A stretch of DNA of 64,000 bases from Sphyrna mokarran (GCA_024679065.1 JAGIQG010000040.1:6076001-6140000); one strand, 5' to 3'. Positions 1 through 37,582 are shown, counted from the stretch's first letter. Made by a program: numbers and translations. Notes: a model not told the origin generated them from the sequence alone.

Positions 1-214
1 TCAACATCGAGACTCAGCTGCCTACCAGTGCTGTTGCTGAGGAACTTTGGGCCAACGATTCCGTAGATGCCGATTCAAGTAGCTATATTTGGTTGCATTG
101 AACTGGGTTGCAATCATTAATGTCTATTTTTGTTGAGTATGAAGGTAACTATCTGGAATATATTCACTGAGAGCGAGTCAATATCCCGATGCTGAAACTC
201 TAGTCGAGCTGAAA

Positions 215-227
215 CGCCCTCTGGTGG
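215..227 (-). promoter_or_regulatory. CTCF core motif CCACCAGAGGGCG (upstream of a presumed V gene left of the window)
   Basis: Exact match to the CCASYAGRKGGCR consensus on the minus strand; same position in each repeat unit. Confidence 0.6.
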
Positions 228-3138
228 TATTTTTTTCTAATTGCGCGCCTCAATGTTCCACTTCCCCCTGAGAGATTGCACAGGACTGTGTTGTGGTGTG
301 GGAGATCCTTATACTTGGACAGGTTGAGTCGTGTGGTGGGGAAGAGAAAGGTATTTTACTCTGAGGGATTTTTGTTTTGCGCAGATTGGACCCAAGGATG
401 GATATGCATTTTTGCCTGTTGGGAAATTAGTTTGGGAAAATGATGATTTATTCATTATGCTTTCAAGACTTATTTTTAAAAAAACAATCAGGGAACATCT
501 TACAGAAAAGTTTCTTTTAAAATGCACAGAGGAGAACATTCAAGATTTATTTTTAAAAAAGCAATCAGGGAACAGTTTACAGAAAAGTTTCTTTTAAAAT
601 GCCCAGAGGAGAACATAACAATTGATTTTCAAATTGAGAACAAAGCACGTGTGCTCTAAGCTGCCCAATGTATGTAGAATCGATACCAGAAAGAGAAACC
701 AGGAGTTCAACAAAAAGAGAAGGAAACCATTCTTCATAACCAATATGAAAAGTTGCTTGTCTATTCGTGAAATCTCGGCGAAACTACGAGCTATATTTAA
801 TTTACAATATTTAATATGGTTTCTCGATCTCTGGTCTTGCTCACGGTGCCACTGAGCGATTGGCTGTTTCTCAAACCATCATCCACTTGAACCGTCACTG
901 CTTCCGATCCTCTCTGCTTCCTGTGTGTAGCAGCAGAGTATATTGGTTCTTGCGGCTGAATCATAGACTGTTGTAGCGCTAACAGGGACCATTCGGCCAT
1001 TTCTCACGTACTGTCCCTGTTAATGCCTTGTCCACTTATTCTTTATCTGCAGCTTGCATTCAATCGCGCATTCTTAATTTTTCATTTGCTGGTCAAATAT
1101 TTATCCACCCGTCTCTGAAAATTACTTATAGATTCTGTCCCCATTACAGTTTGGTGTGCACTGTCGCAACCTCCAATAGTCGACTGCTCAAAACACAAAG
1201 GTCGCTCTCTCCGGAATCACCGGAAATGCTGCCATCCAATCAGGCACTGAGACACCAGCCCATTGTCTTTGTTTCTGTCCAACCTTTTCCAAACCTGCCT
1301 TGAATGTGTATTAGTCTGACAACTACTTCCGAACAGAATTGCTGCTCCTCTGAAAATGTCCTCAGTTGCTCTATTTTGCTTCCAGCGTTGTGCTCTCTCA
1401 TCCCCCATTTCATCTTTCCAGTCTTTCCTACACACTGTGTCTGAGATTAACGCTAAAGCAACGAAGAGTCACTAAACGGATCCATGTCTTTGAACTGTGT
1501 TCTAAACAATGATGTGTGCAGGCTTACACATGTTCCCTTGTGTTCTCAAATCTGCTTCCTTCTTAATAATCCTCGGATTCTGCATTTGTTTAATGACATA
1601 GCAACCTGTTCTCCGTTTTGTTTTAAGTTTATTTATCAGTATCACAAGAAGGCTTACATTAACACTGCAATGAAGTTAATGTGAAATTTCCCTTCTCGGG
1701 ATAGTGAGCAAAGCCCAAATTTACGGATAGGGCAATATCCAGTGACGGGTCTTTAGGTGACCTGGTTCAGAAAATTCAACTATTTAAATATTAAGTAAAT
1801 CTGAGTAATGTTAAAGAAAAATCACAGTCTTTTTAAGCTTCTCTTTCTTTATGAAGTGCAGATTAAATAAACAGAATTGACTATGATGGCATAAAATGAA
1901 GTTAACATTGATTTTGATTCATTCTTCATTTTCTCTGAATTGAAGCGTGTTTTTATTCGGCATAATAACAACAATAAGTTTGTGAAATAATCAGTATGAG
2001 AAGGCTGTGACTTCCCCAGTAAAACTGGCAAATTGTTTTTTGATGTAGAGATGCCGGCGTTGGACTGGGGTAAACACAGTAAGAGGTCTGACAACAGCAG
2101 TTTTAAATCCAACTGATTTATTTGATAGTAAACTCACAAGCTTTTGGCTATTGTAGCCTTCTTCCTCCGCACATACGCAGTATACCCTCCCTGTTTGACA
2201 TGCGCACTATCGAGCCGGCCTCCTGCACAGCGGATAAAACGGTTTCGCTACCAGGGGAAGGGGGGGATTGTGGCATCTGTGGCTGCCATTACTCATTTGG
2301 AGCGTGGTCTCCAAACTCCTCGACTGGGCTGGAAAGCGGGGGTGGAGGACACAGTGACCTCAGCTGACACAAAGTACATGTGGGAATAGAAGGATACAAA
2401 CGGATGGTCTAGTTAGGAACACATGATCCGTTCAGGTTTGGAGATCCAAAGGCCTGTTCCTGTGCTGTATTGTTCTTTGAGTCAGTGGTTTGGATTGGGA
2501 CGTCCCCTTAGCAAAACAGTTTGTTCACTTCAGGTGGAAAGATTTAGATTGCAACTTCATGGGCCTTGCATAGAAAGAGGGGTGGGGAATGCGCAGTGAC
2601 CTCCATCCTGACACAAACTCAGCCCTGGGTGTTTGGCTTTCTGTGCAATGTGTTGGGTCTTAGGTGTCCATGCTGTGAGCTGGGTCAAGGGATGTCTGTG
2701 TAGCGAGTCAAACATGGGGAGGGGGACCCATGCTTTTATGTATGTGTGAGGGTGAATGGACCCTAATGATTGCTTATGTGTTTGTGAAACAGAGAGTGGA
2801 ATCAATATTGTGTGTGCAAGTAGAACTAGAGCTATGGTGTGTATGTCCATGAGATAGAATGAAGTGCCTACGATTCTTTGTGTCTGGTTCACAGAGAGTG
2901 GAGTCAGTACACGCGTGTGAAAAAAGTTATGGTTTGTGTGTAAGATAGCGGGGGAATGTATGTGTGTGAGAGACAGAGAAAAGGGGCTGAGAGAGAGGAA
3001 AGTGATTTTGTCTGGATGGGCAAGTGTGAGAGACGAAGAGAGATTCTGTGTATGGGTGCATATCCAAGAGAGAAACCGAGAGCACATAAAAGTATGAGAA
3101 GAGAAGTCCGTTGTGAGATCTGATTTTCAATTATAAGC

Positions 3139-3303
3139 CAGGGGAAAGCGCGAACGCAGTCCCCCCACTACCACAAATTCTGCAGTCGAGTATCCCACAT
3201 CTGGGGACATCGCAGGCTTCAGAACACCCAGAGTGCAATGGGATAGCCTCATCCTGGGAGATCAACCTGTCTGATCATTGACTCTCCCCTGCCAGGTAAG
3301 TAT
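3139..3303 (-). ncRNA. RNU1: U1 spliceosomal snRNA (variant), copy 1
   Basis: Reverse complement starts ATACTTACCTGGCAGGGGAGA, has the U1A loop ATTGCACTC and Sm site AATTTGTGG, and ends GACTGCGTTCGCGCTTTCCCCTG; 165 nt. A 3'-box-like ATTGAAAATCAGA follows. Confidence 0.95.
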
Positions 3304-3340
3304 GCTCAACTAACCTCTCATATTGTACGTCACATCAAGC

Positions 3341-3358
3341 ATTACCCCTCACAGTCAG
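3341..3358 (-). promoter_or_regulatory. Putative snRNA proximal sequence element (PSE)
   Basis: TGACTGTGAGGGGTAATG at about -55 to -38 from the U1 start, resembling the vertebrate U1 PSE (TGACCGTGTGTGTAAAG). Confidence 0.45.
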
Positions 3359-4456
3359 ACAAACAAAACTTTCACGCATAATATCGCCCTGTTCAGATTT
3401 ATTGTCACTGGAACAACAATAAGATCATGGTTGATCTGAAGTGGATCATATCCACTTTCCTGCTTTCTCCCCATAACCCTTGTCTATCAGAAATCTCATT
3501 GTGAGATTGTGTTTTCTTTTTCGCCATGATGTTTCTTGCTTTGTGATAATCTCTTCTTCAGAAATCAGTGGTGGCAAGGTCATTGAACAAAATTCCGAAG
3601 GGGTGGGGTCAACTATTGAATGACCAGGGAGTCAGAGTGTACAGGGGGAGACATGGGAATACAGATGTGACAATTCAATCAGCCAGGATCTTATCAAATG
3701 TCGGGCAGTCTCGGGGTGGCAGAGTTGCTTAGTCCTGCTCCGAATTTGTCTGTTCACATGGCTACAAGTGGACTTATTATATGAGTTGATTACAAGTCGT
3801 CTTGATACAGACGTTAAACCTCGTAAATGCCCTCATGATATTTTAATGTGCTTTTTGTCTCCTTTACTCCCATTTCCCCGCCTGTGAAACAACCATTTCT
3901 CATCTCCTCTCTCAGCAGCTTATAACTGGCCTGTTCAGAGGCTGTATTTCATCAGTGCGTGTTCCTGCATCAGAAACAGCGGATCTGCAATCAACATGTC
4001 CCACAGAGTAATGGAGAATGGGCTGCTTGTGTTTCAGTCTGTCTCCCGGAGGATAATATTGTTTCCCCTTTTCCTTTAACTGTTCTTTTTATGATGATCA
4101 TTAACAAACCGACCCTCACAGCAGATCGCTGTCTCTCACTGGGACATTGGCTGCAGCACAGATCCAGGGGGTTTCTTTCATTGATATCCAGCTCATACAG
4201 GACGCCCGGTCACTGAGGGCGGGGATTATAACGGCTGCCTTCACTTATGATTCTGGGATGTTTTCTCTCTTCCGCTGCAGTTGTGCAGCTCATTTTCTCA
4301 GCCTCTCCCGCTAACTGTTGGCTGACAGTTTGATCCGAGGTTAATCTGGTTTCCTCTCGGTGTGTATCTGAGCGCCTGCGAGCGCCGCTGCTTTGCAGCA
4401 ACCGCAGTCCTGCTTAAAGCTCAACAGAGCGGAGCTCGCACTAACAACCCAAAGGC

Positions 4457-4495
4457 AGTTTTTGTACAGGGGTGAGACTGCTTTCCATCACTGTG
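4457..4495 (-). other. 23-bp-spacer recombination signal sequence of V1
   Basis: Heptamer CACAGTG (4495-4489), 23-nt spacer (4488-4466), nonamer ACAAAAACT (4465-4457). Confidence 0.95.
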
Positions 4496-4950
4496 ATGGA
4501 TCGAAAGCGCAGTAATACACGGCGGCATCAGTCAGCTGCAGATCCGAGATCTTTAAACTGGTGAATTTAGTCGAGGTCTGAAGATTTATAGAGAAACGGC
4601 TTTTGGCAAAATCTGCTTTATCTTCATTATTGATTGTATCTCTCCACACTATAAACTCGGGCTGGTTTCCTGGGAGTTGTCGGTACCAGTGTAATGTATA
4701 GCTGCTCCGTGTAGTTTCATAGTTACAGGTTAATACGAGCTCTGCTCCTTCTGCTTTAACATCTGAGGGCAGCGACTGAGTGACAGAATCTCCATGAGTT
4801 AAATCTGGAAAATAGAACATTAATAAGAAAAAGTTTAGACCGGTGGCTGATTGAAATGTGATTCCAATCAAGCTTGGGGAATGAAAAAGCGCATCCACAT
4901 TTACCTGTCAGCAATGTTCCCCACACAACCCAGATGCTGAGCAGCCGCAT
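4496..4950 (-). CDS. T-cell receptor alpha/delta-type V gene segment 1 (leader exon 4950-4905, intron 4904-4805, V exon 4804-4496)
   Basis: Leader MRLLSIWVVWGTLLT, then a GT..AG 100-nt intron, then DSVTQ..LTCNY..WYRQ..RFS..LQLTDAAVYYCAF, directly followed by the 23-RSS. Confidence 0.93.
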
Positions 4951-5000
4951 TGTCTCTGTCCTCTCTGTGAAAGGGGAGAGGGGGTTTGGATATTTAGCCT

Positions 5001-5080
5001 CCCTTTTTAAACCCCGCCCTTAATAATCTGTTACCGGCTCTCAGGCTGCGCTCCCCTCACTTCCTCGCTTTCCCATTGGT
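5001..5080 (-). promoter_or_regulatory. V1 promoter region: CCAAT box, GC box and TATA-like TTTAAAA
   Basis: Minus strand reads CCAATGGG ... AGGGCGGGGTTTAAAAAGGG about 55-130 nt upstream of the leader ATG; conserved upstream of V2. Confidence 0.45.
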
Positions 5081-8000
5081 GCTGTGAGGCCGGCAGAGAG
5101 CAAAGAGAATCAACCCCCGGGCTGCATTCCGCTCACTGTTCTTGCAGAGAAAATGCTTCCAGAATTATATACCAGAGTTGGGGAAGGAACACCATCACCA
5201 TAATTGTTCCAAAGAAAATAAATAATTTTTGAATGAGTTTGTCACTTTGTTTTCACGGATTTGGCTCCACTTTCATGACCATGACTCCAGTGAAATTCCT
5301 CTCAAGGGCTTTAATTATTATTATTAATACATGAAATAATGTCAGAGTTGCTGTAAAGTTTAGTTTTCTACTCAAATCTCCCCTTGAGAAGGGGAGAGGG
5401 TGTGCAGCCTTCTTAAACTGCTGTGGTCTCTCGGAACTATTAATATGGGGAAAGAGGATGTGGAACATATCTAGCTTTTCCACTAACGCAAAATTCCTCC
5501 GGATGCTGCGGTTTCATCCCAAACTCTAAAGATGTGCAGGTTAGTTGGATTGGCCAGGCTAACTTGTCCCTTAGTGTCCAAGTTAAGTGTATAGGTAACT
5601 GTATAGGTATGAGCAAGGTATACATTACGTGTATAGGTGTAAGCAACGAAGACTCACTAAACAGATCCATGTGTTTGAACTGTGGTCTCAACAATGATGT
5701 GTGCAGGCTTACACGTGTCCTCTTGTTTTCTGAAATCTGCTTCCTTGTTAATAATCCTCGGGATTCTGCATTTGTTTAATGTCATCAGCGGCTTCTTCCG
5801 TTTTTTAGAAAGTTTATTTATCCGTGTCACAAGAAGGCTCACATTAACACTGTGGGCTCCGGGGATATGGCCTGTGTGGGATTGTTGTCGGGGAATCGGT
5901 GCAGCTTCAGTGGGCCAAATGGCCTCCTTCTGCACTGCAGAGATTTTATAGTCTTATGATATTCAGGCAAAAAAAATTTAAAAACATGTAAAAGGAACCT
6001 ACAGCCGATATCGGAGGATGGTCATTGTCGCATCACACCTCATTATAGATAAAACACCCTAGTGTATTTTCCTGTTCTGCTCTCAATGTTGAAAATGTCT
6101 TAAAGGGAAATGTTTCATTGAGAATGTCAACATCGAGATTCAGTTGCCTACCAGTGCTGTTGCTGAGGAACTTTGGGCCATAGTTCCATAGATGCCGATT
6201 CAAGTAGCTATATTTGGTTGCATTGAACTAGGTTGCAATCATTAATGTCTATTTTTGTTGGGTATGAAGGTAACTATCTGGAATATATTCACTGAGAGCG
6301 AGTCAATATCCCAATGCTGAAACTCGAGTAGAGCTGAAACGCCTCTGGCAGTATTATTTCTAATTGCGCGCCTTAATGTTGCACTTCCCCCTGAGAGATT
6401 GCACAGGACTGTGTTGTGGTGTGGAAGATCCTTATACTTGGACAGGATGACTCCTGTGGTGGGGAAGAGGAAGATATTTTACTCTGAGGGATTTTTTTTG
6501 CGCAGATTGGACCCAAGGATGGATATGCATTTTTCCTGTTGGGAAATTAGTTTGGGAAAGTGATGATTTATTCATTATGCATTCAAGATTTATTTTTAAA
6601 AAAACAATCAGGGAACATTTTACAGAAAAGTTTCTTTTAAAATGCACAGAAGAGAACATAACAATTGATTTTCAAATTGAGAACAAAGCACGTGTGCTCT
6701 AAGCTGCCCAATGTATGTAGAATCGACACCAGAAAGAGAAACCAGGAGTTCAACAAAAAGAGAAGGAAACAATTCTTCATAACCAATATGAAAAGTTGCT
6801 TATCTATTCCTGAAATGTCGGCGAAACTACGAGCTATATTTAATTTACAATATTTAATATGGGTTCTCGATCTCTGGTGTTGCTCACGGTGCCACTGAGC
6901 GATTGGCTGTTTCTCAAACCATCGTCCACTTGAACTCTCACTGCTTCCGATCCTCTCTGCTTCCTGTGTGTAGCAGCAGAGTATATTGGTTCTTGCGGCT
7001 GAATCATAGACTGTTGCAGCACTATCAGAGGCCATTCGGCCATTTCTCACGTACTGTTTCTGTTAATGCGTTGTCCACTTATTCTTTATCTGCAGCTTGC
7101 ATTCAATCGCGCATTCTTAAATTTTCCATTTTCTGGTCAAATATTTATCCACCCGTCTCTGAAAATTACTTATAGATTCTGTCCCCATTACAGTTTGGTG
7201 TGCACTGTCGCAACCTCCAATAGTCGACTGCTCAAAACACAAAGGTCGCTCTCTCCAGAATCACCGGAAATGCTGCCATCCAATCAGGCACTGAGACACC
7301 AGCCCACTGTCTTTGTTTCTTTCCAACCTTTTCCAAACCTGCCTTGAATGTGTATTAGTCTGACAACTACTTCCGAACACAATTGCTGCTCCTCTGAAAA
7401 TGTCCTCAGTTGCTCTATTTTGCTTCCAGCGTTGTGCTCTTTCACCCCCATTTCATCTTTCCAGTCTTTCCTACACACTGTGTCTGAGATTAACGCTAAA
7501 GCAACGAAGAGTCACTAAACGGATCCATGTGTTTGAACTGTGTTCTAAACAATGATGTGTGCAGGCTTACACATGTTCCCTTGTGTTCTCAAATCTGCTT
7601 CCTTCTTAATAATCCTCGGATTCTGCATTTGTTTAATGACATAGCAACCTGTTCTCCGTTTTGTTTTAAGTTTATTTATCAGTATCGCAAGAAGGCTTAC
7701 ATTAACACTGCAATGAAGTTAATGTGAAATTTCCCTTCTCGGGATAAGTGAGCAAAGCCCAAATTTACGGATAGGGCAATATCCAGTGACGGGTCTTTAG
7801 GTGACCTGGTTCAGAAAATTCAACTATTTAAATATTAAGTAAATCTGAGTAATGTTAAAGAAAAATCACAGTCTTTTTAAGCTTCTCTTTCTTTATGAAG
7901 TGCAGATTAAATAAACAGAATTGACTATGATGGCATAAAATGAAGTTAACATTGATTTTCATTCATTCTTCATTTTCTCTGAATTGAAGCGTGTTTTTAT

Positions 8001-9182
8001 TCGGCATAATAACAACAATAAGTTTGTGAAATAATCAGTATGAGAAGGCTGTGACTTCCCCAGTAAAACTGGCAAATTGTTTTTTGATGTAGAGATGCCG
8101 GCGTTGGACTGGGGTAAACACAGTAAGAGGTCTGACAACAGCAGTTTTAAATCCAACTGATTTATTTGATAGTAAACTCACAAGCTTTTGGCTATTGTAG
8201 CCTTCTTCCTCCGCACATACGCAGTATACCCTCCCTGTTTGACATGCGCACTATCGAGCCGGCCTCCTGCACAGCGGATAAAACGGTTTCGCTACCAGGG
8301 GAAGGGGGGTATTGAGGGATCTGTGGCTGCCATTACTCATTTGGAGCGTGGTCTCCAAACTCCTCGACTGGGCTGGAAAGCGGGGGTGGAGGACACAGTG
8401 ACCTCAGCTGACACAAAGTACATGTGGGAATAGAAGGATACAAACGGATGGTCTAGTTAGGAACACATGATCCGTTCAGGTTTGGAGATCCAAAGGCCTG
8501 TTCCTGTGCTGTATTGTTCTTTGAGTCAGTGGTTTGGATTGGGACGTCCCCTTAGCAAAACAGTTTGTTCACTTCAGGTGGAAAGATTTAGATTGCAACT
8601 TCATGGGCCTTGCATAGAAAGAGGGGTGGGGAATGCGCAGTGACCTCCATCCTGACACAAACTCAGCCCTGGGTGTTTGGCTTTCTGTGCAATGTGTTGG
8701 GTCTTAGGTGTCCATGCTGTGAGCTGGGTCAAGGGATGTCTGTGTAGCGAGTCAAACATGGGGAGGGGGACCCATGCTTTTATGTATGTGTGAGGGTGAA
8801 TGGACCCTAATGATTGCTTATGTGTTTGTGAAACAGAGAGTGGAATCAATATTGTGTGTGCAAGTAGAACTAGAGCTATGGTGTGTATGTCCATGAGATA
8901 GAATGAAGTGCCTACGATTCTTTGTGTCTGGTTCACAGAGAGTGGAGTCAGTACACGCGTGTGAAAAAAGTTATGGTTTGTGTGTAAGATAGCGGGGGAA
9001 TGTATGTGTGTGAGAGACAGAGAAAAGGGGCTGAGAGAGAGGAAAGTGATTTTGTCTGGATGGGCAAGTGTGAGAGACGAAGAGAGATTCTGTGTATGGG
9101 TGCATATCCAAGAGAGAAACCGAGAGCACATAAAAGTATGAGAAGAGAAGTCCGTTGTGAGATCTGATTTTCAATTATAAGT

Positions 9183-9347
9183 CAGGGGAAAGCGCGAACG
9201 CAGTCCCCCCACTACCACAAATTCTGCAGTCGAGTATCCCACATCTGGGGACATCGCAGGCTTCAGCACACCCAGAGTGCAATGGGATAGCCTCATCCTG
9301 GGAGATCAACCTGTCTGATCATTGACTCTCCCCTGCCAGGTAAGTAT
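9183..9347 (-). ncRNA. RNU1: U1 spliceosomal snRNA (variant), copy 2
   Basis: Same as copy 1 except the stem II 3' arm (GTGCTGA vs GTTCTGA). Confidence 0.95.
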
Positions 9348-10496
9348 GCTCAACTAACCTCTCATATTGTACGTCACATCAAGCATTACCCCTCACAGTC
9401 AGACAAACAAAACTTTCACGCATAATATCGCCCTGTTCAGATTTATTGTCACTGGAACAACAATAAGATCATGGTTGATCTGAAGTGGATCATATCCACT
9501 TTCCTGCTTTCTCCCCATAACCCTTGTCTATCAGAAATCTCATTATGAGATTGTGTTTTCTCGCCATGATGTTTCTTGCTTTGTGATAATCTCTTCTTCA
9601 GAAATCAGTGGTGGCAAGGTCATTGAACAAAATTCCGAAGGGGTGGGGTCAACTATTGAATGACCAGGGAGTCAGAGTGTACAGGGGGAGACATGGGAAT
9701 ACAGATGTGACAATTCAATCAGCCAGGATCTTATCAAATGTCGGGCAGTCTCGGGGTGGCAGAGTTGCTTAGTCCTGCTCCGAATTTGTCTGTTCACATG
9801 GCTACAAGTGGACTTATTATATTAGTTGATTACAAGTCGTCTTGATACAGACGTTAAACCTCGTAAATGCCCTCATGATATTTTAATGTGCTTTTTGTCT
9901 CCTTTACTCCCATTTCCCCGCCGGTGAAACAGCCATTTCTCATCTCCTCTCTCAGCAGCTTATAACTGGCCTGCTCAGAGGCTGTATTTCATCAGTGCGT
10001 GTTCCTGCATCAAAAACAGCGGATCTGCAATCAACATGTCCCACAGAGTAATGGAGAATGGGCTGCTTGTGTTTCAGTCTGTCTCCCGGAGGATAATATT
10101 GTTTCCTCTTTTCCTTTAACTGTTCTTTTTATGATGATCATTAACAAACCGACCCTCACAGCAGATCGCTGTCTCTCACTGGGACATTGGCTGCAGCACA
10201 GATCCAGGGGGTTTCTTTCATTGATATCCAGCTCATACAGGACGCCCGGTCACTGAGGGCGGGGATTATAACGGCTGCCTTCACTTATGATTCTGGGATG
10301 TTTTCTCTCTCCCGCTGCAGTTGTGCAGCTCAAATTCTCGGCCTCTCCCGCTAACTGTTGGCTGACAGTTTGATCCGAGGTTAATCTGGTTTCCTCTCGG
10401 TGTGTATCTGAGCGCCTGCGAGCGCCGCTGCTTTGCAGCAACCGCAGTCCTGCTTAAAGCTCAACAGAGCGGAGCTCGCACTAATAATCCAAAGGC

Positions 10497-10535
10497 AGTT
10501 TTTGTACAGGGGTGAGACTGCTTTCCATCACTGTG
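10497..10535 (-). other. 23-bp-spacer RSS of V2
   Basis: CACAGTG (10535-10529), 23 nt, ACAAAAACT (10505-10497). Confidence 0.95.
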
Positions 10536-10990
10536 ATGGCTCGAAAGCGCAGTAATACACGGCGGCATCAGTCAGCTGCAGATCCATAATGGTTAAACTG
10601 GTGAATTTAGTCGAGGTCTGAAGATTTATAGAGAAACGGCTTTTGGCAAAATCTGCTTTATCTTCATTACTATATGTATTTCTCCACACTATAAACTCGG
10701 GCTGGTTTCCTGGGAGTTGTCGGTACCAATTTAATGCATAGTTGCTCCGTGTAGTTTCATAGTTACAGGTTAATACGAGCTCTGCTCCTTCTGCTTTAAC
10801 TTCTGACGGCAGCGACTGAGTGACAGAATCTCCATGAGTTAAATCTGGAAAATAGAACATTAATAAGAAAAAGTTTAGACCGGTGGCTGATAGAAATGTG
10901 ATTCCAATCAAGCTTGGGGAATGAAAAAGCGCATCCACATTTACCTGTCAGCAATGTTCCCCACACAACCCAGATGCTGAGCAGCCGCAT
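10536..10990 (-). CDS. T-cell receptor alpha/delta-type V gene segment 2 (leader exon 10990-10945, intron 10944-10845, V exon 10844-10536)
   Basis: Same architecture as V1; open frame with conserved Cys, WYRQ and YYCAF. Confidence 0.93.
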
Positions 10991-12194
10991 TGTCTCTGTC
11001 CTCTCTGTGAAAGGGGAGAGGGGGGTTTGGATATTTAGCCTCCCTTTTTAAACCCCGCCCTTAATAATCTGTTACCGGCTCTCAGTCTGCGCTCCCCTCA
11101 CTTCCTCGCTTTCCCATTGGTGCTGTGAGGCCGGCAGAGAGCAAAGAGAATCAACCCCCGGGCTGCATTCCGCTCACTGTTCTTGTAGAGAAAATGCTTC
11201 CAGAATTATATACCAGAGTTGGGGAAGGAACGCCTTCACCATAATTGGACCAAAGAAAGTAAATAATTTTTGAATGAGTTTGTCACTTTGTTTTCACGGA
11301 TTTTCTTCCACTATCAGCGTGGTGATAACCATGACTCCAGTGAAATTCCTCTCAAGGGCTTTAATTATTATTAATATATGAAGTAATTGTATATAAAGCG
11401 GGCTCGTTGGGCCGAAGGGCCTGTTTCCCGTTCTGTGTTGTTCTTTATTCTTTGTTCTAATGCCAGAGTTGCTGGCAAGTCCAGTTTTCTACTCAATTCT
11501 CCCCTTGAGAAGGAGAGAGAGTGTGCAGCGTTTTTAAACTGTTATGATTTCTCAGAACTATTAGTAATGAGGATGTGTAATATATCCAGCTTTTCCACTA
11601 GTGCAAAGTTCCTCCGGATGCTGCGGTTTCATCCCAAATTCCAAAGATTTGCAGGTTAGGGTGGATTGGCCAGGCTAACTTGTCCCTTAGTGTCCCAAGG
11701 TGTGTATGTAAGTAGAGGGGTTAGCAGGTTGAATATGTGGGCTCCAGGGATATGGCCTGTGTGGGATTGTTGTCGGGAAGTCGGTGCAGGTTCAGGATTT
11801 TATTCTCTTGCGATATTCAGGGAAGAAATGTTTTTAAAACATGTAAAAGGAACCTGCAGCTGACATTGGAGCATGGTCATTATCCCATCACACCTCACTA
11901 TAGGTAAAACACTCCAGTGTATTTTCCCGTTCTGCTCTCAATGTTGAAAATGTTTTAAAGGGGAATGTTTTATTGAAAATGTCAACATCGAGACTCAGAT
12001 GCCTACCAGTGCTGTTGCTGAGGAAATTTGGGTCATAGTTCCGTAGATGCCGAATCAAGTAGCTGTATTTGGTTGCATTGAACTGGGTTGCAATCATTAA
12101 TGTCTATTTTTGTTGGGTATGAAGGTAACTATCTGGAATATATTCACTGAGAGCGAGTCAATATCCCAATGCTGAAACTCTAGTAAAGCTGAAC

Positions 12195-12207
12195 CGCCCT
12201 CTGGTGG
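12195..12207 (-). promoter_or_regulatory. CTCF core motif ~1.2 kb upstream of the V2 leader
   Basis: CCACCAGAGGGCG on the minus strand; the unit-B equivalent at ~6340-6351 is degenerate (CTGCCAGAGGCG). Confidence 0.6.
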
Positions 12208-12886
12208 TATTTTTTCTAATTGTGTTCCTCAAAGTTCCACTTCTCCCTGAGAGATTGCACAGGACTGTGTTGTGGTGTGGGACATCCTTATACTTGGACA
12301 GGATGACTCGTGCGGTGGGGAAGAGAAAGATATTTTACTCTGAGGAATTTGTTTTTTGCGCAGATTGGACCCAGGGATGGATATGCATCTTGCCTGATTA
12401 GTTTGGAAAAGTGATGATTTGTTCATTATGCTTATGTTCTTTAAATTTGTACACGTAAAGATAACCTCTCGTGCATTGTTTCTAATTTATTCAATGAATG
12501 CAGCAGCTCCCCTTCAACTAAGTACATTCTGGTTATCTTTTGACAGGTTCATTCCATTTCCACATCTTTGTTTTGTGCACTGGTTTTTCCGTGAGCAGAA
12601 CTTGCCTCAAGTTTTAATACGTGCCACATTGGTAGCTTTATAAATATTACTCAATGGGAAAGGGTTTTTCCGGGTTTCAGGACAATTGCAATTCCTTCAG
12701 CTTCATCTTCTCCAGCCAGAGTTCTCTCTGACTTGTCCATCATCCCCAGACCCTGTAGGACCCGGAGAACAGACCGTGCAGTTCCGTCTGTCTGGTTATG
12801 CTGATGTGTACACGTCACAGACGTCTCCAGGTGCCTTTGTGACATCACCTACACCCAGAGTGACATCAGAGGGTCTGGCCTGAGGG

Positions 12887-13870
12887 TCAGAAACATCTCC
12901 CCTGGAGCTGGTCTGAATATTCAGCCCTGAGTTTATGGGAATTAACAACTGATCAGGAACATCTCCCCTGGAGCTGGTCTGAATATTCAGCCCTGAGTTT
13001 GTGGGAATTAACAACTGATCAGAAACATCTCCCCTGGAGCTGGTCTGAATATTCAGCCCTGAGTTTGTGGGAATTAACAACTGATCAGGAACATCTCCCC
13101 TGGAGCTGGTCTGAATATTCAGCCCTGAGTTTGTGGGAATTAACAACTGATCAGAAACATCTCCCCTGGAGCTGGTCTGAATATTCAGCCCTGAGTTTGT
13201 GGGAATTAACAACTGATCAGAAACATCTCCCCTGGAGCTGGTCTGAATATTCAGCCCTGAGTTTATGGGAATTAACAACTGATCAGGAACATCTCCCCTG
13301 GAGCTGGTCTGAATATTCAGCCCTGAGTTTGTGGGAATTAACAACTGATCAGAAACATCTCCCCTGGAGCTGGTCTGAATATTCAGCCCTGAGTTTATGG
13401 GAATTAACAACTGATCAGAAACATCTCCCCTGGAGCTGGTCTGAATATTCAGCCCTGAGTTTGTGGGAATTAACAACTGATCAGAAACATCTCCCTTGGA
13501 GCTGGTCTGAATATTCAGCCCTGAGTTTGTGGGAATTAACAACTGATCAGGAACATCTCTCCTGGAGCTGGTCTGAATATTCAGCCCTGAGTTTGTGGGA
13601 ATTAACAACTGATCAGAAACATCTCCCCTGGAGCTGGTCGGAATATTCAGCCCTGAGTTTATGGGAATTAACAACTGATCAGAAACATCTCTCCTGGAGC
13701 TAATCTGAACATCCAGATCTGAGTTTGTGGGAATTAACAACTGATCAGAAACATCTCCCCTGGAGCTGGTCGGAATATTCAGCCCTGAGTTTATGGGAAT
13801 TAACAACTGATCAGAAACATCTCTCCTGGAGCTAATCTGAACATCCAGATCTGAGTTTGTGGGAATTAAC
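12887..13870. repeat. 66-bp minisatellite, ~15 copies
   Basis: Unit tcagaaacatctcccctggagctggtctgaatattcagccctgagtttrtgggaattaacaactga; gives a 22-aa periodicity in ORFs 12796..13896 (-) and 12999..13703 (+). Confidence 0.97.
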
Positions 13871-16979: not shown

Positions 16980-17822
16980 TCACTTGTGCCCTTTTTGGTG
17001 TCTCCGCAGGCTGGATAACTGAGTGTATCCCTTCCCACACACAGAGCAGGGGAACGGCTTCTCCTCTGTGTGAACATGTTGGTGTGTCAGGAGGTTGGAC
17101 GATTTAGTGAATCCCATCCCACACTCTGAGCAGGTGAATGGCCTCTCGTCCTTGTGAACTCGCTGGTGTATTAGCAGGGTGAATGATTCACTGAATCCCT
17201 TCCCACACATGCTGCAGATGAACGGCCTCTCCCCGGTGTGAACTCGCTGGTGTGACAGTAGGTGGGATAACTGAGCGAATCTCTTCTCACACTCAGGGCA
17301 GGTGAATGGTTTCTCCCCAGTGTGAACGCGTTGGTGTGTCTGCAGGCTGCATAACCGAGTGAATCCCTTCCCACATGCACAGCAGGTGAATGGCTTCTCC
17401 CCAGTGTGAATTCGCTGGTGTGTCAGCAGGTTCCATGAAGTAGTGAATGTTTTCCCACATTCCTCGCAGGTGAAGGGCTTTTCCCTGGTATGAACTCGCT
17501 GATGTCTCAGAAGGTGGGATAACTGAGAGAATCCCTTCCCGCACTGAGAGCAGAAGAATGGTTTCTCCCCAGTGTGAACTCGCTTGTGCGTGTGGAGGTG
17601 GGTTAAATGAGTGAATCCCTTTCCACAGTCAGAGCAGGTGAATGGCCTCTCCCCGGTGTGAACTCGCTGATGTGTCTGCAGGTTGCACGAATGAGCAAAT
17701 CCCTTCCCACAGTCTGAGCAGGTAAACGGCCTCTCTCCAGTGTGAACGCGTCGATGAATTTCCAGCTCAGATGGGAACCGCCATTTCTTCCCACAGTCCT
17801 CACATCGCCACGGTGTCTCCAT
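16980..17822 (-). CDS. C2H2 zinc-finger protein, 280 aa, 10 fingers, no effector domain seen (ZNF-1)
   Basis: Ten CxxC-x12-HxxxH units with TGE(K/R)P linkers. Terminal-exon acceptor TTTCACAG|GATATT at 18187; exon-1 donor at 20130. Confidence 0.9.
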
Positions 17823-22006: not shown

Positions 22007-22578
22007 GTAAGTATATATTTATCAACAAGCCTCAATCAGCACCTTCAGGAGAATTGAGAGGGTGAATATTTGATACAGCAGAATGAGAATGGAGGGAGAA
22101 TGTGTGGGATGGAAATTTACAGCGTCTGGGGAATAAGAGAGGAAAGAATGTTCCATAGAAACTAGAATTGCCTGTTCTGAATTTCTATCCTGAACTGACT
22201 GTGATGAATTTTGTCAACTGTTTTTACAGGATATTAGAAGAAGAATCACACAGATAAATATTAAATATCACATCTTGATCTGACAGAGTCCCTCAGTTCC
22301 TTGGAAACTAAATATCCTCAGCCTCTGATTGAGAAGGAGAAATGTTTGACCGGTCTGTCGACTGCAAGATTTTAAACAACAATGTGACTGGAAAAACACA
22401 GATGCAAACACACACCCGAGTGAGTGTTCCAGTGCACTGAGTGTGGAAAGAGCTTTAAGCAGTTACACATCCTGCAAAATACATCACAGCATTCACAGCG
22501 AGGAGAGACTGTACAGTGTTGTCTGTGTGAACAAGGCTTCAAATGATAAACCTGCAACAATACAAGGAGACCAGCAAT

Positions 22579-23421
22579 ATGGAAAAACCGTGGAAATGTG
22601 AGGACTGTGGAAAGAGATACAAAGCGCCCTCTTTACTGGAAGCTCATCGTCGCAGCCACACTGGGGAGAGGCCGTTTACCTGCTGTGTTTGTGGGAAGGG
22701 ATTCAGTGATTCATCCACTCTGCAGAGACACCAGCGAGTTCACACCGGGGAGAGTGCATTCACCTGCTGTCAGTGTGGAAAGGGATTTACTCAGGTATCC
22801 AGCCTGCAGACACACCAGCGAGTTCACACTGGGGAGAGGCCATTCACCTGCTCTCAGTGTGGGAAGGGATTCAGTAAGTCATCCAACCTACAGAAGCACC
22901 AGCGAGTTCACACAGGAGAGAGGCCATTCAGCTGCTCTGAATGTGAGAAAAGATTCACTCAGGTATCTCATCTGCAGGCACACCAACGGGTTCACACTGG
23001 GGAGAGACCATTCACTTGCACTCAGTGTGGGAAGGGATTCACTCAATTGTACAGCCTGCAGACACACCAGCGAGATCACACTGGGGAGAGGCCGTACAGC
23101 TGCTCGCAGTGTGGGAAGGGATTCATTCATTTATCAAACCTGCAGACACATCAGCGAGTTCACACTGGGGAGAGGCCGTTCACCTGCTCTCAGTGTGGGA
23201 AGGAATTCACTCAGTTATCCAATCTGCGGAGACACCAGCGAGTTCACACTGGGGAGAGACCGTTCACCTGCCCTGTGTGTGGGAAGGGATTCACTCGGTT
23301 CTCTACCCTGCAGTCACACCAGCGAATTCACACTGGGGAGAGACTGCTCGTTTGTTTTCAGTGTGGGAAGGGATTCTGTGATTCATCCACTCTGCTGACA
23401 CACCAACAAGTTCACAAGTGA
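22579..23421 (+). CDS. C2H2 zinc-finger protein, 10 fingers (ZNF-2); an upstream in-frame ATG at 22543 is possible
   Basis: MEKPWKC start, 10 fingers, ends VHK*; acceptor tttttacag|GATATT at 22230. Confidence 0.9.
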
Positions 23422-29241: not shown

Positions 29242-30336
29242 ATGGAGAAACCATGGAAATGTGCGGACTGTGGGAAGAAATATAAAGTTCCATCTCGGCT
29301 GGAAATTCATCGACGCAGTCACACTGGAGAGAGGCCGTTCATCTGCTCTCAGTGTGGAGAGGGATTCACTTGGTTATCCACTCTGCAAAGACACCAGCGA
29401 GTTCACACTGGAGAGAGGCCATTCACCTGCTCTCAGTGTGGGAAGGGATTCATTCAATCATCCAGTCTGCGGGCACACCAGCGAGTTCACACTGGAGAAA
29501 AGCCATTCACCTGCACCCTGTGTGGGAAGGGTTTCATTCAGTCATCCCACCTACTGAATCACAAAACTACGCACACTAATGAGAGACGCTTTAAATGCTC
29601 TGACTGTGGGAGCAGCTTCAAAACCTCTGGTGAACTGGTGTTCCACCAGCGCATTCACACTGAGGAGAGACCATTCAGCTGCTCTCATTGCACCAAGAGG
29701 TTTAGAAGGTCATCACATCTGCAGACACACCAGCGAGTTCACACCGGGGAGAGACCATTTACCTGCACCGTATGTGGGAAGGGATTCACACAGTTATCCA
29801 GCCTATGGGCACACCAGCAAATTCACACTGGGGAGAGGCCATTTACCTGCTCTGTGTGTGGGAAAGGATTCACTCTGTCATCGAACCTGCTCAGACACAA
29901 AATCACTCACACCCAGGACAGACCCTTCAAATGTCCTGATTGTGGGAACGGATTCAAACGTGCTTCAGACCTGAAGGACCACGAGCGAATTCACACTGGG
30001 GAGAGACCGTTCAGCTGCTCTGTGTGTGGGAAGGGATTCACTCAGTTATCCCACCTATTGAATCATAAAGTCACTCATAGCAATGAGAGACCCTTTGAAT
30101 GTTCTGACTGTAAGAGTAACTTCAAAAGCTCTCAAGATCTGATGTCCCACCAACGTGTTCACACTGAGGAGAGACCATTCAGTTGCTCTCACTGCACAAA
30201 GAGGTTTAAATGGTCATCTGCACTGCAGAGACACCAGAGAGTTCACACTGGGGAGAGGTTATTCACCTGCTCTGTGTATGGAAAGGGATTCACTCAGTTA
30301 TCCAGCCTGCTGAAACACGAGCAAGTTCACAAGTGA
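29242..30336 (+). CDS. C2H2 zinc-finger protein, 364 aa, 13 fingers, last one with a C->Y change (ZNF-3)
   Basis: MEKPWKC start, TGERP linkers, VHK* end; acceptor at 28903. Confidence 0.9.
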   Translation: MEKPWKCADCGKKYKVPSRLEIHRRSHTGERPFICSQCGEGFTWLSTLQRHQRVHTGERPFTCSQCGKGFIQSSSLRAHQRVHTGEKPFTCTLCGKGFIQSSHLLNHKTTHTNERRFKCSDCGSSFKTSGELVFHQRIHTEERPFSCSHCTKRFRRSSHLQTHQRVHTGERPFTCTVCGKGFTQLSSLWAHQQIHTGERPFTCSVCGKGFTLSSNLLRHKITHTQDRPFKCPDCGNGFKRASDLKDHERIHTGERPFSCSVCGKGFTQLSHLLNHKVTHSNERPFECSDCKSNFKSSQDLMSHQRVHTEERPFSCSHCTKRFKWSSALQRHQRVHTGERLFTCSVYGKGFTQLSSLLKHEQVHK

Positions 30337-36411: not shown

Positions 36412-37582
36412 TCACTCGTGAACTTGTTGGTGTCTCAACAGCTGGGATGAAACTCTGAATCCCTTTCCACACTGAGAGCAGGTGAACGGCCTCTCCCCAC
36501 TGTGAACTTGCTGGTGTGTGCATAGGTTGGATAGGTCAGTGAATCCCTTCCCACACTGAGGGCAGATGAATGGCCTCTCCCCAGTGTGAATTCGCTCATG
36601 TGTCCGCAGACTGGATAACTGAGCGAATCCCTTTCCACACTCAGAGCAAATGAATGGCTTCTCCCCAGTGTGAACTCGCTGGTGTCTCCGCATGCTGGAT
36701 GAATCACTGAATCCCTTCCCACACTGGGAGCACGTGAATGGTTTCTCCCCAGTGTGAACTCGTAGGTGTGTCTGCAGACTCGATAACTGAGTGACTCCCT
36801 TACCACACTGAGAGCAGGTGAATGGTTTCTCCCCAGTATGAATTCGCTGGTGCTTCCGCAGGTTGGATGATTGAGTGAATCCCTCCCCACACTGAGGGCA
36901 GATGAATGGCCTCTCCCCAGTGTGAACTCGCTGATGTGTCTGCAGGCTGGTTGAATGAGTGAATCCCTTCCCACAATGAGAGCACATGAATGGCCTCTCC
37001 CCAGTGTGAAGTCGCTGGTGTGTTTGCAGGCTCGATAAATGAATGAATTCCTTCTCACACTGAGAGCAGATGAATGGTCTCTCCCCAGTGTGAACTCGCT
37101 GGTGTGTCCGCAGGTTGGATAACTGACTGAATCCCTTCCCACACTGAGAGCAGGTGAACGGCTTCTCCCCACTGTGTACCCGCTGGTGTGTCTGCAAGTT
37201 GGATAACTGACTGAATCCCTTCCCACACTGAGAGCAGATGAACGGTCTCTCCCCAGTGTGAACTCGCTGGTGTATCTGCAGGCTGGATAACTGACTGAAT
37301 CCTTTCCCGCAATGAGAGCAGGTGAATGGCCACTCCCCAGTGTGAACACACTGGTGTGTCTGCAGGTGAGATGATTGTGTGAATCCCTCCGCACACTGAG
37401 AGCAGGTGAACGGCCTTTCCCCAGTGTGAACTCGCTCGCAGATGGGATATTTCACTGAATCCCTTCCCACATTGAGAACAGGTGAATGGCCTCTCTCCAG
37501 TATGACTGCGCCGGTGAACCTCCAGCTCTGATGGGGCTCTGTATCTCTTCCCACAGTCCCCACATTTCCATGGTTTCTCCAT
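36412..37582 (-). pseudogene. Frameshifted C2H2 ZNF (ZNF-4), originally 14 fingers; 8-nt deletion in finger 2 at ~37437
   Basis: MEKPWKC frame (ORF 37055..37582) runs to ..ISHLR, then the 12 remaining fingers lie in another frame. CTGCG^AGCGAGTTCAC lacks the usual GACACACC. Confidence 0.8.

What the first reader, a model, noticed from the sequence alone, without database searches (positions are those of the whole stretch)
3139..10990. TCR V gene segments co-amplified with a U1 snRNA gene in one 6-kb tandem unit
Seen: each unit has an intact RSS-bearing V segment and, ~1.15 kb 3' of its RSS on the same strand, a full-length U1 with PSE-like and 3'-box-like flanks. Known: U1 genes are strong Pol II units usually arrayed on their own, and deletional V(D)J joining removes DNA 3' of the V used. 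Inference: an snRNA array and an antigen-receptor V array have been fused. Interspersed U1 transcription could open chromatin next to each RSS or attract AID (shark TCR alpha is known to hypermutate). T cells would also somatically delete U1 copies in proportion to the V chosen. Alternatively, snRNA-array concerted evolution may be what amplifies this V family. I do not know of this arrangement being described.
Basis: partly seen in the sequence, partly recalled or inferred. Interest (0 to 1): 0.85.

Follow-up and report, generated by a model that had tools for sequence, protein, structure and literature searches.

The report
TCR V genes co-duplicated with U1
In a shark T-cell-receptor gene array, each roughly 6-kb repeat carries one intact V gene segment and one complete copy of the U1 splicing RNA gene; the U1 is most likely a hitch-hiker of recent duplication, not a working partner of the V gene.

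Summary
Two head-to-tail units (5,856 and 6,123 nt, minus strand; a third begins at the left edge) each carry an intact leader+V exon with a 23-spacer RSS. A full-length U1 lies 1,149/1,153 bp beyond the nonamer on the same strand (Rfam RF00003, 149.1 and 145.2 bits). The V is of TCR alpha(/delta) type.

A 3'-box-like motif sits at +12..+20. The "PSE-like" flank is weak, and no octamer/DSE was found.

The units are 98-100% identical per 200-column bin across about 3.4 kb that includes U1. V exon 2 differs at 17 of 312 bases, and 10 of 12 changed codons are nonsynonymous, mostly in the CDRs. U1 identity between the copies therefore says nothing about selection.

The other 50 kb of the window is C2H2 zinc-finger genes. 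Contigs of three other coded organisms tile the cassette, but none bridges V to U1. The scan noted the same V+U1 cassette in both neighbouring windows of this genome (unchecked).

Best reading: a U1 gene copy captured in a V cassette and amplified as a passenger. Functional coupling is untested. Four searches of the held library found no description.

The parts
10945..10990 (-). Unit A: V leader exon (ATG at 10990; GT donor at 10944)
   Evidence: 46 of 46 bases identical to unit B
10536..10844 (-). Unit A: V exon 2 (V-set domain, ends ...YYCAFEP)
   Evidence: open frame; Pfam V-set 59.2 bits; 57-61% identity to shark V domains, two of them in V-J-C products. The searches used 10845-10534, which adds one intron base and two heptamer bases.
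10497..10535 (-). Unit A: RSS (heptamer CACAGTG, 23-bp spacer, nonamer ACAAAAACT)
   Evidence: 39 of 39 identical between the units
9348..10496 (-). Unit A: spacer between RSS and U1 (1,149 bp). It holds a 65-nt piece of a very high-copy interspersed repeat (equivalent to 3417-3481 in unit B) at about -114 to -178 from U1, and the weak PSE-like site at -54..-36.
9183..9347 (-). Unit A: full-length U1 snRNA
   Evidence: RF00003, 149.1 bits, model 1-166; the MFE fold shows the stem-loops
9163..9171 (-). Unit A: 3'-box-like core AAAATCAGA, +12..+20 after the U1 3' end
4905..4950 (-). Unit B: V leader exon
4496..4804 (-). Unit B: V exon 2 (90% amino-acid identity to unit A; differences mostly in CDR1, CDR2 and late FR3)
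4457..4495 (-). Unit B: RSS with 23-bp spacer
3139..3303 (-). Unit B: full-length U1 snRNA. It has one substitution relative to unit A, in the 3' strand of stem-loop 2, which adds a non-standard pair.
   Evidence: RF00003, 145.2 bits; 164 of 165 identical to unit A
3119..3127 (-). Unit B: 3'-box-like core
6536..12391 (-). Tandem unit A (5,856 nt)
413..6535 (-). Tandem unit B (6,123 nt)
1..412 (-). Start of a third unit, which runs off the window's left edge
   Evidence: families D4 and D5 have three copies: 59-412, 6184-6535, 12039-12391

Best explanation
This is an ordinary recent tandem (segmental) duplication inside a shark TCR alpha/delta V region. The duplicated cassette happens to contain, about 1.15 kb 3' of the V segment's RSS, a DNA-level copy of a U1 snRNA gene.

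Shown:
- V and U1 share one repeated unit on the same strand.
- The V segments are intact and their sequences differ from each other.
- The U1 copies are full length.

Inferred:
- A single U1 gene copy, with its own short flanks, landed next to one V segment. It was then carried along as that V subfamily expanded by unequal crossing-over or gene conversion, in a duplication-prone region that also amplifies C2H2 zinc-finger genes.
- The U1 copies may well still be transcribable (about even odds), like human DNA-mediated class I / variant U1 genes.
- Their position beside the RSS has no role in V(D)J recombination.
- If the V segments face J/C, T cells that use an upstream V lose these U1 copies. 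This would be a by-product, not a function.
For: - Unit structure and coordinates.
- Very recent common ancestry or homogenisation: identity is 98.9% over the RSS-U1 spacer, 164 of 165 in U1, and 99.6% over the next 1 kb. U1 is no better conserved than its neutral surroundings.
- Only V exon 2 stands out: 17 of 312 bases differ, and 10 of 12 changed codons are nonsynonymous. This is what one expects of a V gene under diversifying selection or patchy conversion.
- The one U1 difference breaks a pair in stem-loop 2 without compensation.
- Context: only two U1 and two V segments in 64 kb. The remaining ~50 kb holds C2H2 zinc-finger arrays and a ~9.6-kb near-perfect palindrome, so the region is rich in duplications.
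- In this genome the scan's U1 notes are limited to this window and its two neighbours (unchecked notes).
- Promoter hallmarks are incomplete: no octamer, only a weak PSE-like site, and a transposon fragment at -114..-178.
- Geometry: U1 is transcribed away from the RSS. Pol II snRNA transcription ends a few hundred bp past the 3' box (PMC5493778, passages read). The next V promoter lies about 4 kb further on.
Against: - The whole cassette seems older than one species. At >=85% likeness, contigs of coded organism D cover 30 of 30 bins of 2500-5500. One contig joins U1 to its upstream flank (3119-3391) and another spans the RSS (4262-4599). Organisms B and C cover 17 and 12 of the 30 bins. Linkage may thus have persisted through speciation, which a neutral passenger can do but need not.
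- The highest identity between the units (98-100% per 200-column bin, window 10464 to 7069) includes U1. The V exon 2 and most of the sequence upstream of its promoter are 82-96% identical; the promoter-leader bin itself is 99.5%. So homogenisation seems focused on the U1-bearing part.
- The U1 keeps the 5' splice-site pairing sequence, the Sm site, the stem-loop 2 loop and stem-loop 4, with compensated stems, and has a 3'-box-like motif at the right distance. It is not a decayed pseudogene.
- I could not test expression, chromatin state or V usage.
Confidence: 0.6

Rival explanations
1. The cassette U1 copies are active Pol II snRNA genes (canonical or variant U1) that add to the cell's U1 pool. 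The V array is simply where part of the U1 gene family lives. T cells lose some copies on rearrangement, with little consequence. This is compatible with the passenger origin but adds real U1 function.
For: - Full-length match at 149/145 bits, with the 5' end, Sm site, stem-loop 2 loop and stem-loop 4 matching the consensus and the stems compensated.
- 3'-box-like motif at +12..+20.
- PSE-like site at -54, 10 of 12 with one extra base.
- U1 bins have higher summed contig depth than their flanks in all four runs, so near-identical U1 sequence exists elsewhere in these genomes.
- Human class I 'pseudogenes' with gene-like flanks turned out to be expressed variant U1 genes (PMC3561869, abstract and passages).
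Against: - The stem-loop 1 loop (the U1-70K site) differs from the Rfam consensus at 3 positions, 2 of them strongly conserved. SL1/U1-70K contact matters for Sm-core assembly and U1 level (PMC10870369, passages).
- No octamer or recognisable DSE within 450 nt.
- The ungapped PSE score is at chance level.
- A repeat fragment sits between the PSE and DSE positions.
- No RNA run holds the stretch.
- I do not know this species' canonical U1, so 'variant' is itself unproven.
Confidence: 0.5
2. Functional coupling: the U1 transcription unit beside each RSS keeps local chromatin open. Alternatively it recruits factors (Oct-1/SNAPc, Integrator, CTCF/NELF, possibly AID through paused Pol II). Either way it would raise RAG access or hypermutation of the adjacent V. 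This is analogous in logic to transcribed intergenic repeats in the mouse Igh V region (that comparison is recalled, not looked up).
For: - Fixed spacing of 1,149/1,153 bp and the same strand in both units.
- The cassette is apparently kept in three other organisms.
- snRNA genes can be histone-depleted and constitutively open (PMC5493778, passages).
- Shark TCR alpha hypermutates (PMC5931798, abstract seen in the listing).
Against: - The fixed spacing is trivially explained by recent duplication (98.9% spacer identity).
- U1 points away from the RSS, and its promoter is more than 1 kb from it.
- Promoter elements are unconvincing.
- U1 notes are confined to three adjacent windows of a multi-megabase locus, so most V segments apparently manage without a U1.
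- There are no expression or chromatin data.
Confidence: 0.08
3. U1-driven amplification: array-type concerted evolution of the snRNA gene (unequal exchange and conversion seeded by the U1 segment) is what multiplies and homogenises the unit, and the V is the passenger.
For: The mosaic identity profile. The ~3.4-kb part that includes U1 is 98-100% identical per bin, while the V exon 2 and most of the sequence upstream of its promoter are 82-96% identical and carry indels. At the unit's upstream end, the first and third copies are closer to each other (96% and 92%) than to the middle one (90% and 80%). This shows that exchanges have occurred after duplication.
Against: - Any tandem duplicate shows such mosaics.
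- V arrays expand by cassette duplication without snRNA genes in every jawed vertebrate (general knowledge).
- The high-identity tract is not centred sharply on U1: it covers about 1.1 kb upstream of it and 2.1 kb downstream.
- Only two units can be compared here.
Confidence: 0.1
4. The U1-like element is a retropseudogene or the head of a U1-derived SINE, or the tandem unit is an assembly artefact.
For: A high-copy repeat fragment lies about 115 nt upstream, and U1 bins have raised depth.
Against: - The U1 is full length (model 1-166), ends at the canonical 3' end, and is followed by a 3'-box-like motif and no A-rich tail.
- U1 depth is about 5-20 times that of the flanks, not thousands of times as for the real repeat at 3417-3481.
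- The two units differ at scattered sites and by indels, and independent contigs of run X1 match them with 0-3 differences. They are therefore not a collapsed or duplicated assembly error.
Confidence: 0.02

Closest known systems
Human class I U1 pseudogenes / variant U1 (vU1) genes at 1q12-21
   Same: Both are DNA-mediated copies of U1 that keep gene-like flanks (3' box, PSE-like site) and differ from the consensus at protein-binding loops. Some human copies are transcribed and processed (PMC3561869, abstract and passages; PMC5493778, passages).
   Different: The human copies lie in their own cluster, not inside an antigen-receptor V cassette. Here the DSE/octamer is not recognisable and expression is unknown.
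Tandemly repeated vertebrate snRNA gene arrays (such as the human RNU1 and RNU2 clusters)
   Same: Head-to-tail units, one snRNA gene per unit, with high identity between units.
   Different: Only two or three units are seen here. Each unit also carries a protein-coding V gene segment. The scan's notes suggest that the cassettes are scattered among zinc-finger genes and do not form a pure array. The description of the human arrays is general knowledge plus passages of PMC3561869.
Unrelated genes embedded in and co-duplicated with TCR V arrays (such as the trypsinogen genes in the mammalian TCR beta locus; recalled, not looked up here)
   Same: A non-immune gene sits among V segments, multiplies with them, and is deleted somatically when upstream V segments rearrange.
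   Different: The passenger here is a small non-coding Pol II gene about 1.15 kb from the RSS, in a fixed position within each cassette.
Germline TCR alpha/delta V segments of elasmobranchs
   Same: Leader/intron/V-exon layout, a V-set domain ending in YYCA, and an RSS with a 23-bp spacer. Relatives of 58-61% identity occur as V-J-C products. The closest named relatives of one of these products (P0002) are 'T cell receptor alpha chain ...-like' of Rhincodon typus and Pristis pectinata.
   Different: Nothing unusual in the V itself. Its own use in rearranged transcripts was not tested.

Membership tests
U1 spliceosomal snRNA (Rfam RF00003) | Sequence and structure match to the covariance model above the gathering score, over the full length | tested here: met
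   149.1 and 145.2 bits against a gathering score of 69.5, model 1-166, no truncation
U1 spliceosomal snRNA (Rfam RF00003) | 5' splice-site pairing sequence, Sm site, stem-loop 2 loop and stem-loop 4 match the consensus | tested here: met
   The alignment shows these stretches identical to the model consensus. Which proteins bind where is from PMC10870369 (passages) and general knowledge.
U1 spliceosomal snRNA (Rfam RF00003) | Consensus loop of stem-loop 1 (U1-70K site) | tested here: not met
   The loop reads GAUCAGACAGG against the consensus GAUCAaGAAGg: 3 positions unmatched, 2 of them upper-case in the consensus. Whether all U1 genes of this species share this loop could not be tested.
Active Pol II snRNA gene | PSE about 50 bp upstream of the start | tested here: inconclusive
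   Published consensus (PMC5493778): best 8 of 12 at -54, at chance level for the 56 positions tried; 10 of 12 if one extra base is allowed (background 0.04% per position). The recalled 19-mer consensus gave nothing of 9 or more of 16 between -80 and -30. PSE sequences of elasmobranchs are unknown to me.
Active Pol II snRNA gene | DSE with Oct-1 octamer / STAF site about 200-250 bp upstream | tested here: not met
   Best octamer match 6 of 8. Best STAF match in the DSE range is 13 of 18, at -410/-414; a reverse-strand 14 of 18 lies at -50, over the PSE-like site. No octamer variant within 400 nt.
Active Pol II snRNA gene | 3' box 9-19 nt downstream of the mature 3' end | tested here: met
   AAAATCAGA at +12..+20 in both units: 7 of 8 against the published AARRYAGA (0.38% of window positions score 7 or more), 9 of 9 against the recalled AAARNNAGA (35 sites on both strands of 64 kb). 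The upstream GTTY part matches at only 2 of 4.
Active Pol II snRNA gene | The RNA is made, capped and packaged | not testable with these tools
   No listed holder of the stretch is an RNA run. The single read-laying run showed contigs of DNA or unknown type only.
Germline TCR alpha/delta V gene segment | Split leader, open V exon, V-set domain with the conserved Cys...WYRQ...YYC | tested here: met
Germline TCR alpha/delta V gene segment | RSS: heptamer, 23-bp spacer, nonamer directly 3' of the V exon | tested here: met
   CACAGTG, 23 bp, ACAAAAACT in both units
Germline TCR alpha/delta V gene segment | Closest named relatives are TCR alpha chains; relatives are used in V-J-C products | tested here: met
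   P0001 and P0002 (61% and 58% identity) continue into a J (FGAGTQLTVEP) and a constant region. The named kin of P0002 are 'T cell receptor alpha chain MC.7.G5-like' of Rhincodon typus and Pristis pectinata.
Germline TCR alpha/delta V gene segment | These very V segments are rearranged and expressed, and face J/C | not tested
   No RNA data. The position of J/C is unknown.
U1 retropseudogene / U1-headed SINE | 3' truncation or A-rich tail, no gene-type flanks, high copy number | tested here: not met
   Full length, no A tail, 3'-box-like motif. Depth is only moderately above the flanks.
Tandem snRNA gene array under concerted evolution | Many head-to-tail units, each with one snRNA gene, homogenised along the whole unit | tested here: inconclusive
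   Two units plus the start of a third. Identity is mosaic, 82-100% per 200-column bin. The extent beyond the window was not readable.

The most novel reading that the evidence does not exclude
In this shark lineage, a subfamily of TCR alpha/delta V segments has kept a transcribed U1 gene at a fixed 1.15 kb behind the RSS because it helps the V. As a constitutively open, Pol II/SNAPc/Integrator-loaded unit, it would mark the neighbouring RSS for RAG, or feed AID-type hypermutation. It might also act as a loop-extrusion obstacle together with the CTCF-like site at the unit border. In that case an snRNA gene has been co-opted as a cis-regulatory module of an antigen-receptor array. T cells would then also carry clone-specific U1 gene dosage.
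Probability: 0.08. Interest if true: 0.8.

Novelty: new variant of a known kind. Interest (0 to 1): 0.4.

Why it matters
If the U1 is only a passenger, this is a tidy example of how duplication-prone antigen-receptor arrays sweep up and multiply unrelated genes. It also gives a natural case in which lymphocytes somatically lose copies of a housekeeping RNA gene.

It offers a practical marker as well. The U1 and its flanks date and trace the expansion of one V subfamily across shark species.

If the U1 is active, part of a shark's U1 (or variant U1) gene family sits in DNA that T cells delete, which can be tested with simple DNA and RNA assays. Only if the U1 influences recombination or hypermutation would it change how V-gene accessibility is understood.

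Tried and rejected
- **Retropseudogene or SINE head:** rejected. The U1 is full length, has no A tail and has a 3'-box-like motif.
- **Assembly artefact:** rejected. The units differ by scattered substitutions and indels, and independent contigs match them.
- **Coding function for the 176-codon ORFs just 3' of each U1 (2557-3087, 8601-9131):** rejected. They are low-complexity His/Thr/Leu/Ser-rich translations of CT/CA-rich DNA.
- **Other V segments or RSSs in the window:** tblastn found none beyond the two. My first RSS regular expression missed even the true RSSs because of how it was written; one search fixed this.
- **Further U1 fragments, other RNA families, tRNAs:** none.
- **PDB sequence search of the V exon:** uninformative. 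It was swamped by multi-domain antibody constructs; one TCR alpha chain, 4mng_E, appeared at 6.3e-18.
- **Thermodynamic fold:** the MFE of -59.2 kcal/mol shows the U1 stem-loops, but the z-score is only -0.76 (42 of 200 shuffles fold as well). Folding energy alone gives no support.
- **Bacterial-type promoter/terminator scan:** irrelevant to a vertebrate locus. I draw nothing from it.
- **U1 variants and depth from read laying:** not interpretable. At 3156 and 3162 the depth of run X1 is 0 although the bin mean is 685, and the tool states that human-like contigs are silently dropped. The U1-like contigs that remain in organisms C and D (7-14 differences in 82-138 nt) may therefore be a biased sample.
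- **Copy number:** per-contig depths in X1 (about 22-25 for some pieces, 152-183 for others) hint at several near-identical cassette copies. The tool warns that depth is not a copy number, so I do not rely on it.
- **Earlier findings by sequence:** blank.
- **Literature:** searches found no paper that links U1/snRNA genes with TCR or Ig V arrays or with sharks. The held library lacks most subscription journals, and supplements were closed, so a locus annotation table that lists such a U1 could exist unseen.

Full report
**What is there**

A scan of the 64-kb window with all Rfam models finds exactly two matches, both to U1 (RF00003). Both are on the minus strand and both cover model positions 1-166: 9347-9183 (149.1 bits) and 3303-3139 (145.2 bits). 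The gathering score is 69.5. A permissive scan (E<=1) adds no further U1 fragment or other RNA family, and there are no tRNAs.

On the same strand, upstream of each U1, lies a complete germline V gene segment.
- Unit A: leader exon 10990-10945, a 100-bp GT...AG intron, V exon 10844-10536, then CACAGTG, a 23-bp spacer and ACAAAAACT (10535-10497).
- Unit B: the same layout shifted by 6,040 bases (leader 4950-4905, V exon 4804-4496, RSS 4495-4457).

The gap from nonamer to U1 start is 1,149 bp in unit A and 1,153 bp in unit B.

Direct-repeat analysis and a pairwise alignment define two head-to-tail units, 12391-6536 (5,856 nt) and 6535-413 (6,123 nt). A third copy of the unit's upstream end lies at 59-412, so the series continues past the left edge of the window.

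**What the V is**

Both V exons are open and match Pfam V-set (59.2 and 56.8 bits). The closest database proteins are 57-61% identical. They include a Chiloscyllium punctatum protein and several Callorhinchus milii Ig-like domains.

Two of the best hits (P0001 and P0002) continue beyond YYCA into a junction, a J (FGAGTQLTVEP) and a constant region. They are rearranged receptor chains. The closest named relatives of P0002 are 'T cell receptor alpha chain ...-like' proteins of Rhincodon typus and Pristis pectinata.

With the 23-bp RSS and the absence of a nearby J or C, this is a translocon-type TCR alpha(/delta) V segment of an elasmobranch. Unchecked notes of this scan agree. They place NAR-TCR V segments, IgM clusters beside TCR alpha/delta V segments and other V arrays on the same sequence piece, up to megabases away. 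I could not name the species, because run and organism names are coded.

**What the U1 is**

The alignment to the model shows a perfect 5' end (the 5' splice-site pairing sequence), Sm site, stem-loop 2 loop and stem-loop 4. The stems keep pairing through changes on both strands.

Two things depart from the consensus:
- The loop of stem-loop 1, where U1-70K binds, reads GAUCAGACAGG against the consensus GAUCAaGAAGg. Three positions are unmatched, two of them strongly conserved.
- Stem-loop 2 has four (unit A) or five (unit B) non-standard pairs.

The MFE fold reproduces the stem-loops, but it is no more stable than shuffled sequence (z = -0.76).

Downstream, AAAATCAGA lies at +12..+20 in both units, where a 3' box belongs. 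It scores 7 of 8 against the published AARRYAGA and 9 of 9 against the older AAARNNAGA form that I recall. The latter occurs only 35 times on both strands of the window.

Upstream, the published PSE consensus gives 8 of 12 at -54, which is at chance level for the 56 positions tried. It gives 10 of 12 if one extra base is allowed. No Oct-1 octamer or convincing STAF site lies within 450 nt.

A 65-nt piece of an extremely abundant interspersed repeat sits at -114 to -178. Its summed contig depth is about 260,000, against a few hundred beside it, and it is cut at the same two places in all four runs.

The U1 is not a retropseudogene or a SINE head: it is full length, has no A tail and has gene-like 3' processing sequence. 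It looks like a DNA-level copy of a U1 gene. Its closest analogue is the human class I pseudogene / variant U1 class, some members of which are expressed (PMC3561869, abstract and passages; PMC5493778, passages). I cannot say whether it is transcribed. I also cannot say whether its loop is this species' normal U1 loop. No RNA run holds the stretch, and the U1 part of the read-laying result is distorted by the tool's silent removal of human-like contigs.

**How the two units compare**

Identity between the units, feature by feature:

| Feature | Matches | Identity |
|---|---|---|
| Leader exon | 46 of 46 | 100% |
| Intron | 98 of 99 | 99.0% |
| V exon 2 | 295 of 312 | 94.6% |
| RSS | 39 of 39 | 100% |
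| RSS-to-U1 spacer | 1,134 of 1,147 | 98.9% |
| U1 | 164 of 165 | 99.4% |
| Next 1 kb downstream | 996 of 1,000 | 99.6% |

Further from the core, identity falls to 94-97% toward the unit's downstream end. In the 1.3 kb upstream of the V promoter it is 82-96%, and that stretch also carries indels.

Three conclusions follow.
- The duplication, or the last homogenisation, is very recent, so the near-identity of the two U1 copies says nothing about selection on U1. The single U1 difference breaks a pair in stem-loop 2 without compensation.
- The V exon is the outlier. Twelve codons differ, ten of them nonsynonymously, mostly in CDR1, CDR2 and late FR3. This fits diversifying selection or patchy conversion, and it confirms the scan's separate note on this.
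- The profile is a mosaic. In addition, at the unit's upstream end the first and third copies resemble each other (96% and 92%) more than either resembles the middle one (90% and 80%). Exchanges between units have therefore occurred after duplication.

**Surroundings**

Beyond 12.4 kb there is no further V, RSS-bearing segment or U1. The window holds:
- a 66-bp tandem repeat at 12887-13870;
- many C2H2 zinc-finger arrays of 84-bp period on both strands; 6 of the 10 long ORFs that I tested are zinc-finger proteins and the other 4 have no Pfam match;
- a near-perfect palindrome of about 9.6 kb per arm (39136-48720 and 53759-63369), whose spacer contains the N run.

The V-U1 cassettes thus sit in a duplication-rich stretch where zinc-finger genes are amplified too. 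A CTCF-like motif lies at the unit borders, about 1.2 kb upstream of the next V start codon: 15 of 15 at 12207 and 14 of 15 at 227, both on the minus strand. The middle copy did not reach the 13-of-15 listing cut.

**Beyond the window**

The scan's own unchecked notes report the same kind of V+U1 cassette 31.4 kb before and 28.7 kb after this window. In this genome, U1 notes occur nowhere else among 350 annotated windows. That suggests a local V subfamily and not a locus-wide design, although readers of other windows may simply not have looked.

Public runs: one run (X1, organism A) holds 68% of the sampled words of 3000-5100. Runs of organisms B and C hold 20% and 15%, and many others hold 7-10%.

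I laid the contigs of four runs on 2500-5500 at >=85% likeness:
- Organism D covers 30 of 30 bins, B covers 17 and C covers 12.
- In D, one contig joins U1 to its upstream flank (3119-3391; 36 differences). Another spans the RSS into the V exon (4262-4599; 17 differences).
- In B, a contig joins the 5' part of U1 to the flank (3248-3398; 6 differences).
- No listed contig in any run, X1 included, bridges V to U1. Contigs break at the high-copy repeat.

So all pieces of the cassette exist in at least one other organism at roughly 87-95% identity, and U1 keeps its specific flank there. Linkage in relatives is thus inferred from tiling, not shown directly.

**Interpretation**

The simplest account is that one U1 gene copy came to lie 1.15 kb behind a V segment, and the cassette was then multiplied by the unequal exchange that builds all V arrays. 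U1 would be a passenger (confidence about 0.6).

It may still be a working gene. I give that about even odds. For: intact functional motifs, a 3'-box-like site and a weak PSE-like site. Against: the altered U1-70K loop, the lack of a DSE, and a transposon piece in the promoter region.

- U1 is transcribed away from the RSS.
- snRNA transcription stops a few hundred bp past the 3' box (PMC5493778).
- The next V promoter is about 4 kb further on.
- Most V segments of this very large locus apparently lack a U1.

Somatic loss of U1 copies in T cells follows if these V segments face J/C, but I could not establish the orientation.

That profile is not specific, however.

**Novelty and score**

Searches of the held library found no paper that links U1 or snRNA genes to TCR/Ig V arrays or to sharks. 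The term sets were:
- 'U1 snRNA' + shark + 'T cell receptor';
- 'snRNA gene' + 'V gene segments' + interspersed + 'antigen receptor locus';
- 'U1 snRNA' + TRAV + 'tandem duplication';
- a U1/tandem/elasmobranch set.

The library lacks most subscription journals, and supplements were closed, so a locus annotation table that lists such a U1 could exist unseen.

Both ingredients are known kinds: DNA-mediated U1 copies, and V cassettes that carry passengers. The combination appears to be undescribed, so I class it as a new variant of a known kind. It is a real and tidy curiosity with easy experimental follow-up, but nothing yet shows that it does anything. Interest 0.4.

Noticed in passing
window 39136-48720 and 53759-63369: Near-perfect inverted repeat (arms 99-100% complementary, about 9.6 kb each) carrying C2H2 zinc-finger genes, around a ~5-kb spacer that contains the N run 48734-48833. 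It is either a real large palindrome of head-to-head ZNF genes or an assembly artefact at a gap.
   Followed up: partly
window 12207 (-), 227 (-); the middle unit's copy near 6350: A CTCF-like motif (CCACCAGAGGGCGGT, 15 of 15; 14 of 15 at 227) sits at the border of the V-U1 unit, in V orientation, about 1.2 kb upstream of the V start codon. The copy in the middle unit did not reach the 13-of-15 listing cut.
   Followed up: partly
window 3417-3481 and 9461-9525: A 65-nt fragment of an extremely abundant interspersed repeat (summed contig depth about 260,000 in X1 and 624,000 in X4, against hundreds beside it). It is bounded at the same two positions in the runs of four organisms, so it was already in the ancestral cassette. 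The repeat family was not identified.
   Followed up: partly
window 12887-13870: Tandem array of a 66-bp unit, 14.9 copies, 94% matches, just upstream of the V-U1 units. Long ORFs across it are probably artefacts of the repeat.
   Followed up: no
window 5587-5886 versus 1402-1701 and 7445-7744: Unit B carries, upstream of its V promoter, a diverged (about 60% identical) extra copy of a ~300-nt segment that otherwise lies about 1.5 kb downstream of U1 in both units. This accounts for part of the length difference between the units.
   Followed up: no
window 3253-3290 (inside the unit-B U1): Contigs of three organisms (X1, X2, X4) show a joint that 'goes back 38' within stem-loop 1 of U1, with 2-4 extra letters. 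This suggests a U1-derived sequence family with a partly duplicated stem-loop 1 elsewhere in these genomes, or a graph artefact at the hairpin.
   Followed up: no
window 16980-17822, 22543-23421, 29242-30336, 36412-37644, 45895-47325, 55154-56584: Six long ORFs are C2H2 zinc-finger arrays with 7-17 zf-C2H2 (PF00096) matches each, on both strands. They fill most of the window beside the V-U1 units, so zinc-finger genes are interleaved with TCR V cassettes here.
   Followed up: partly
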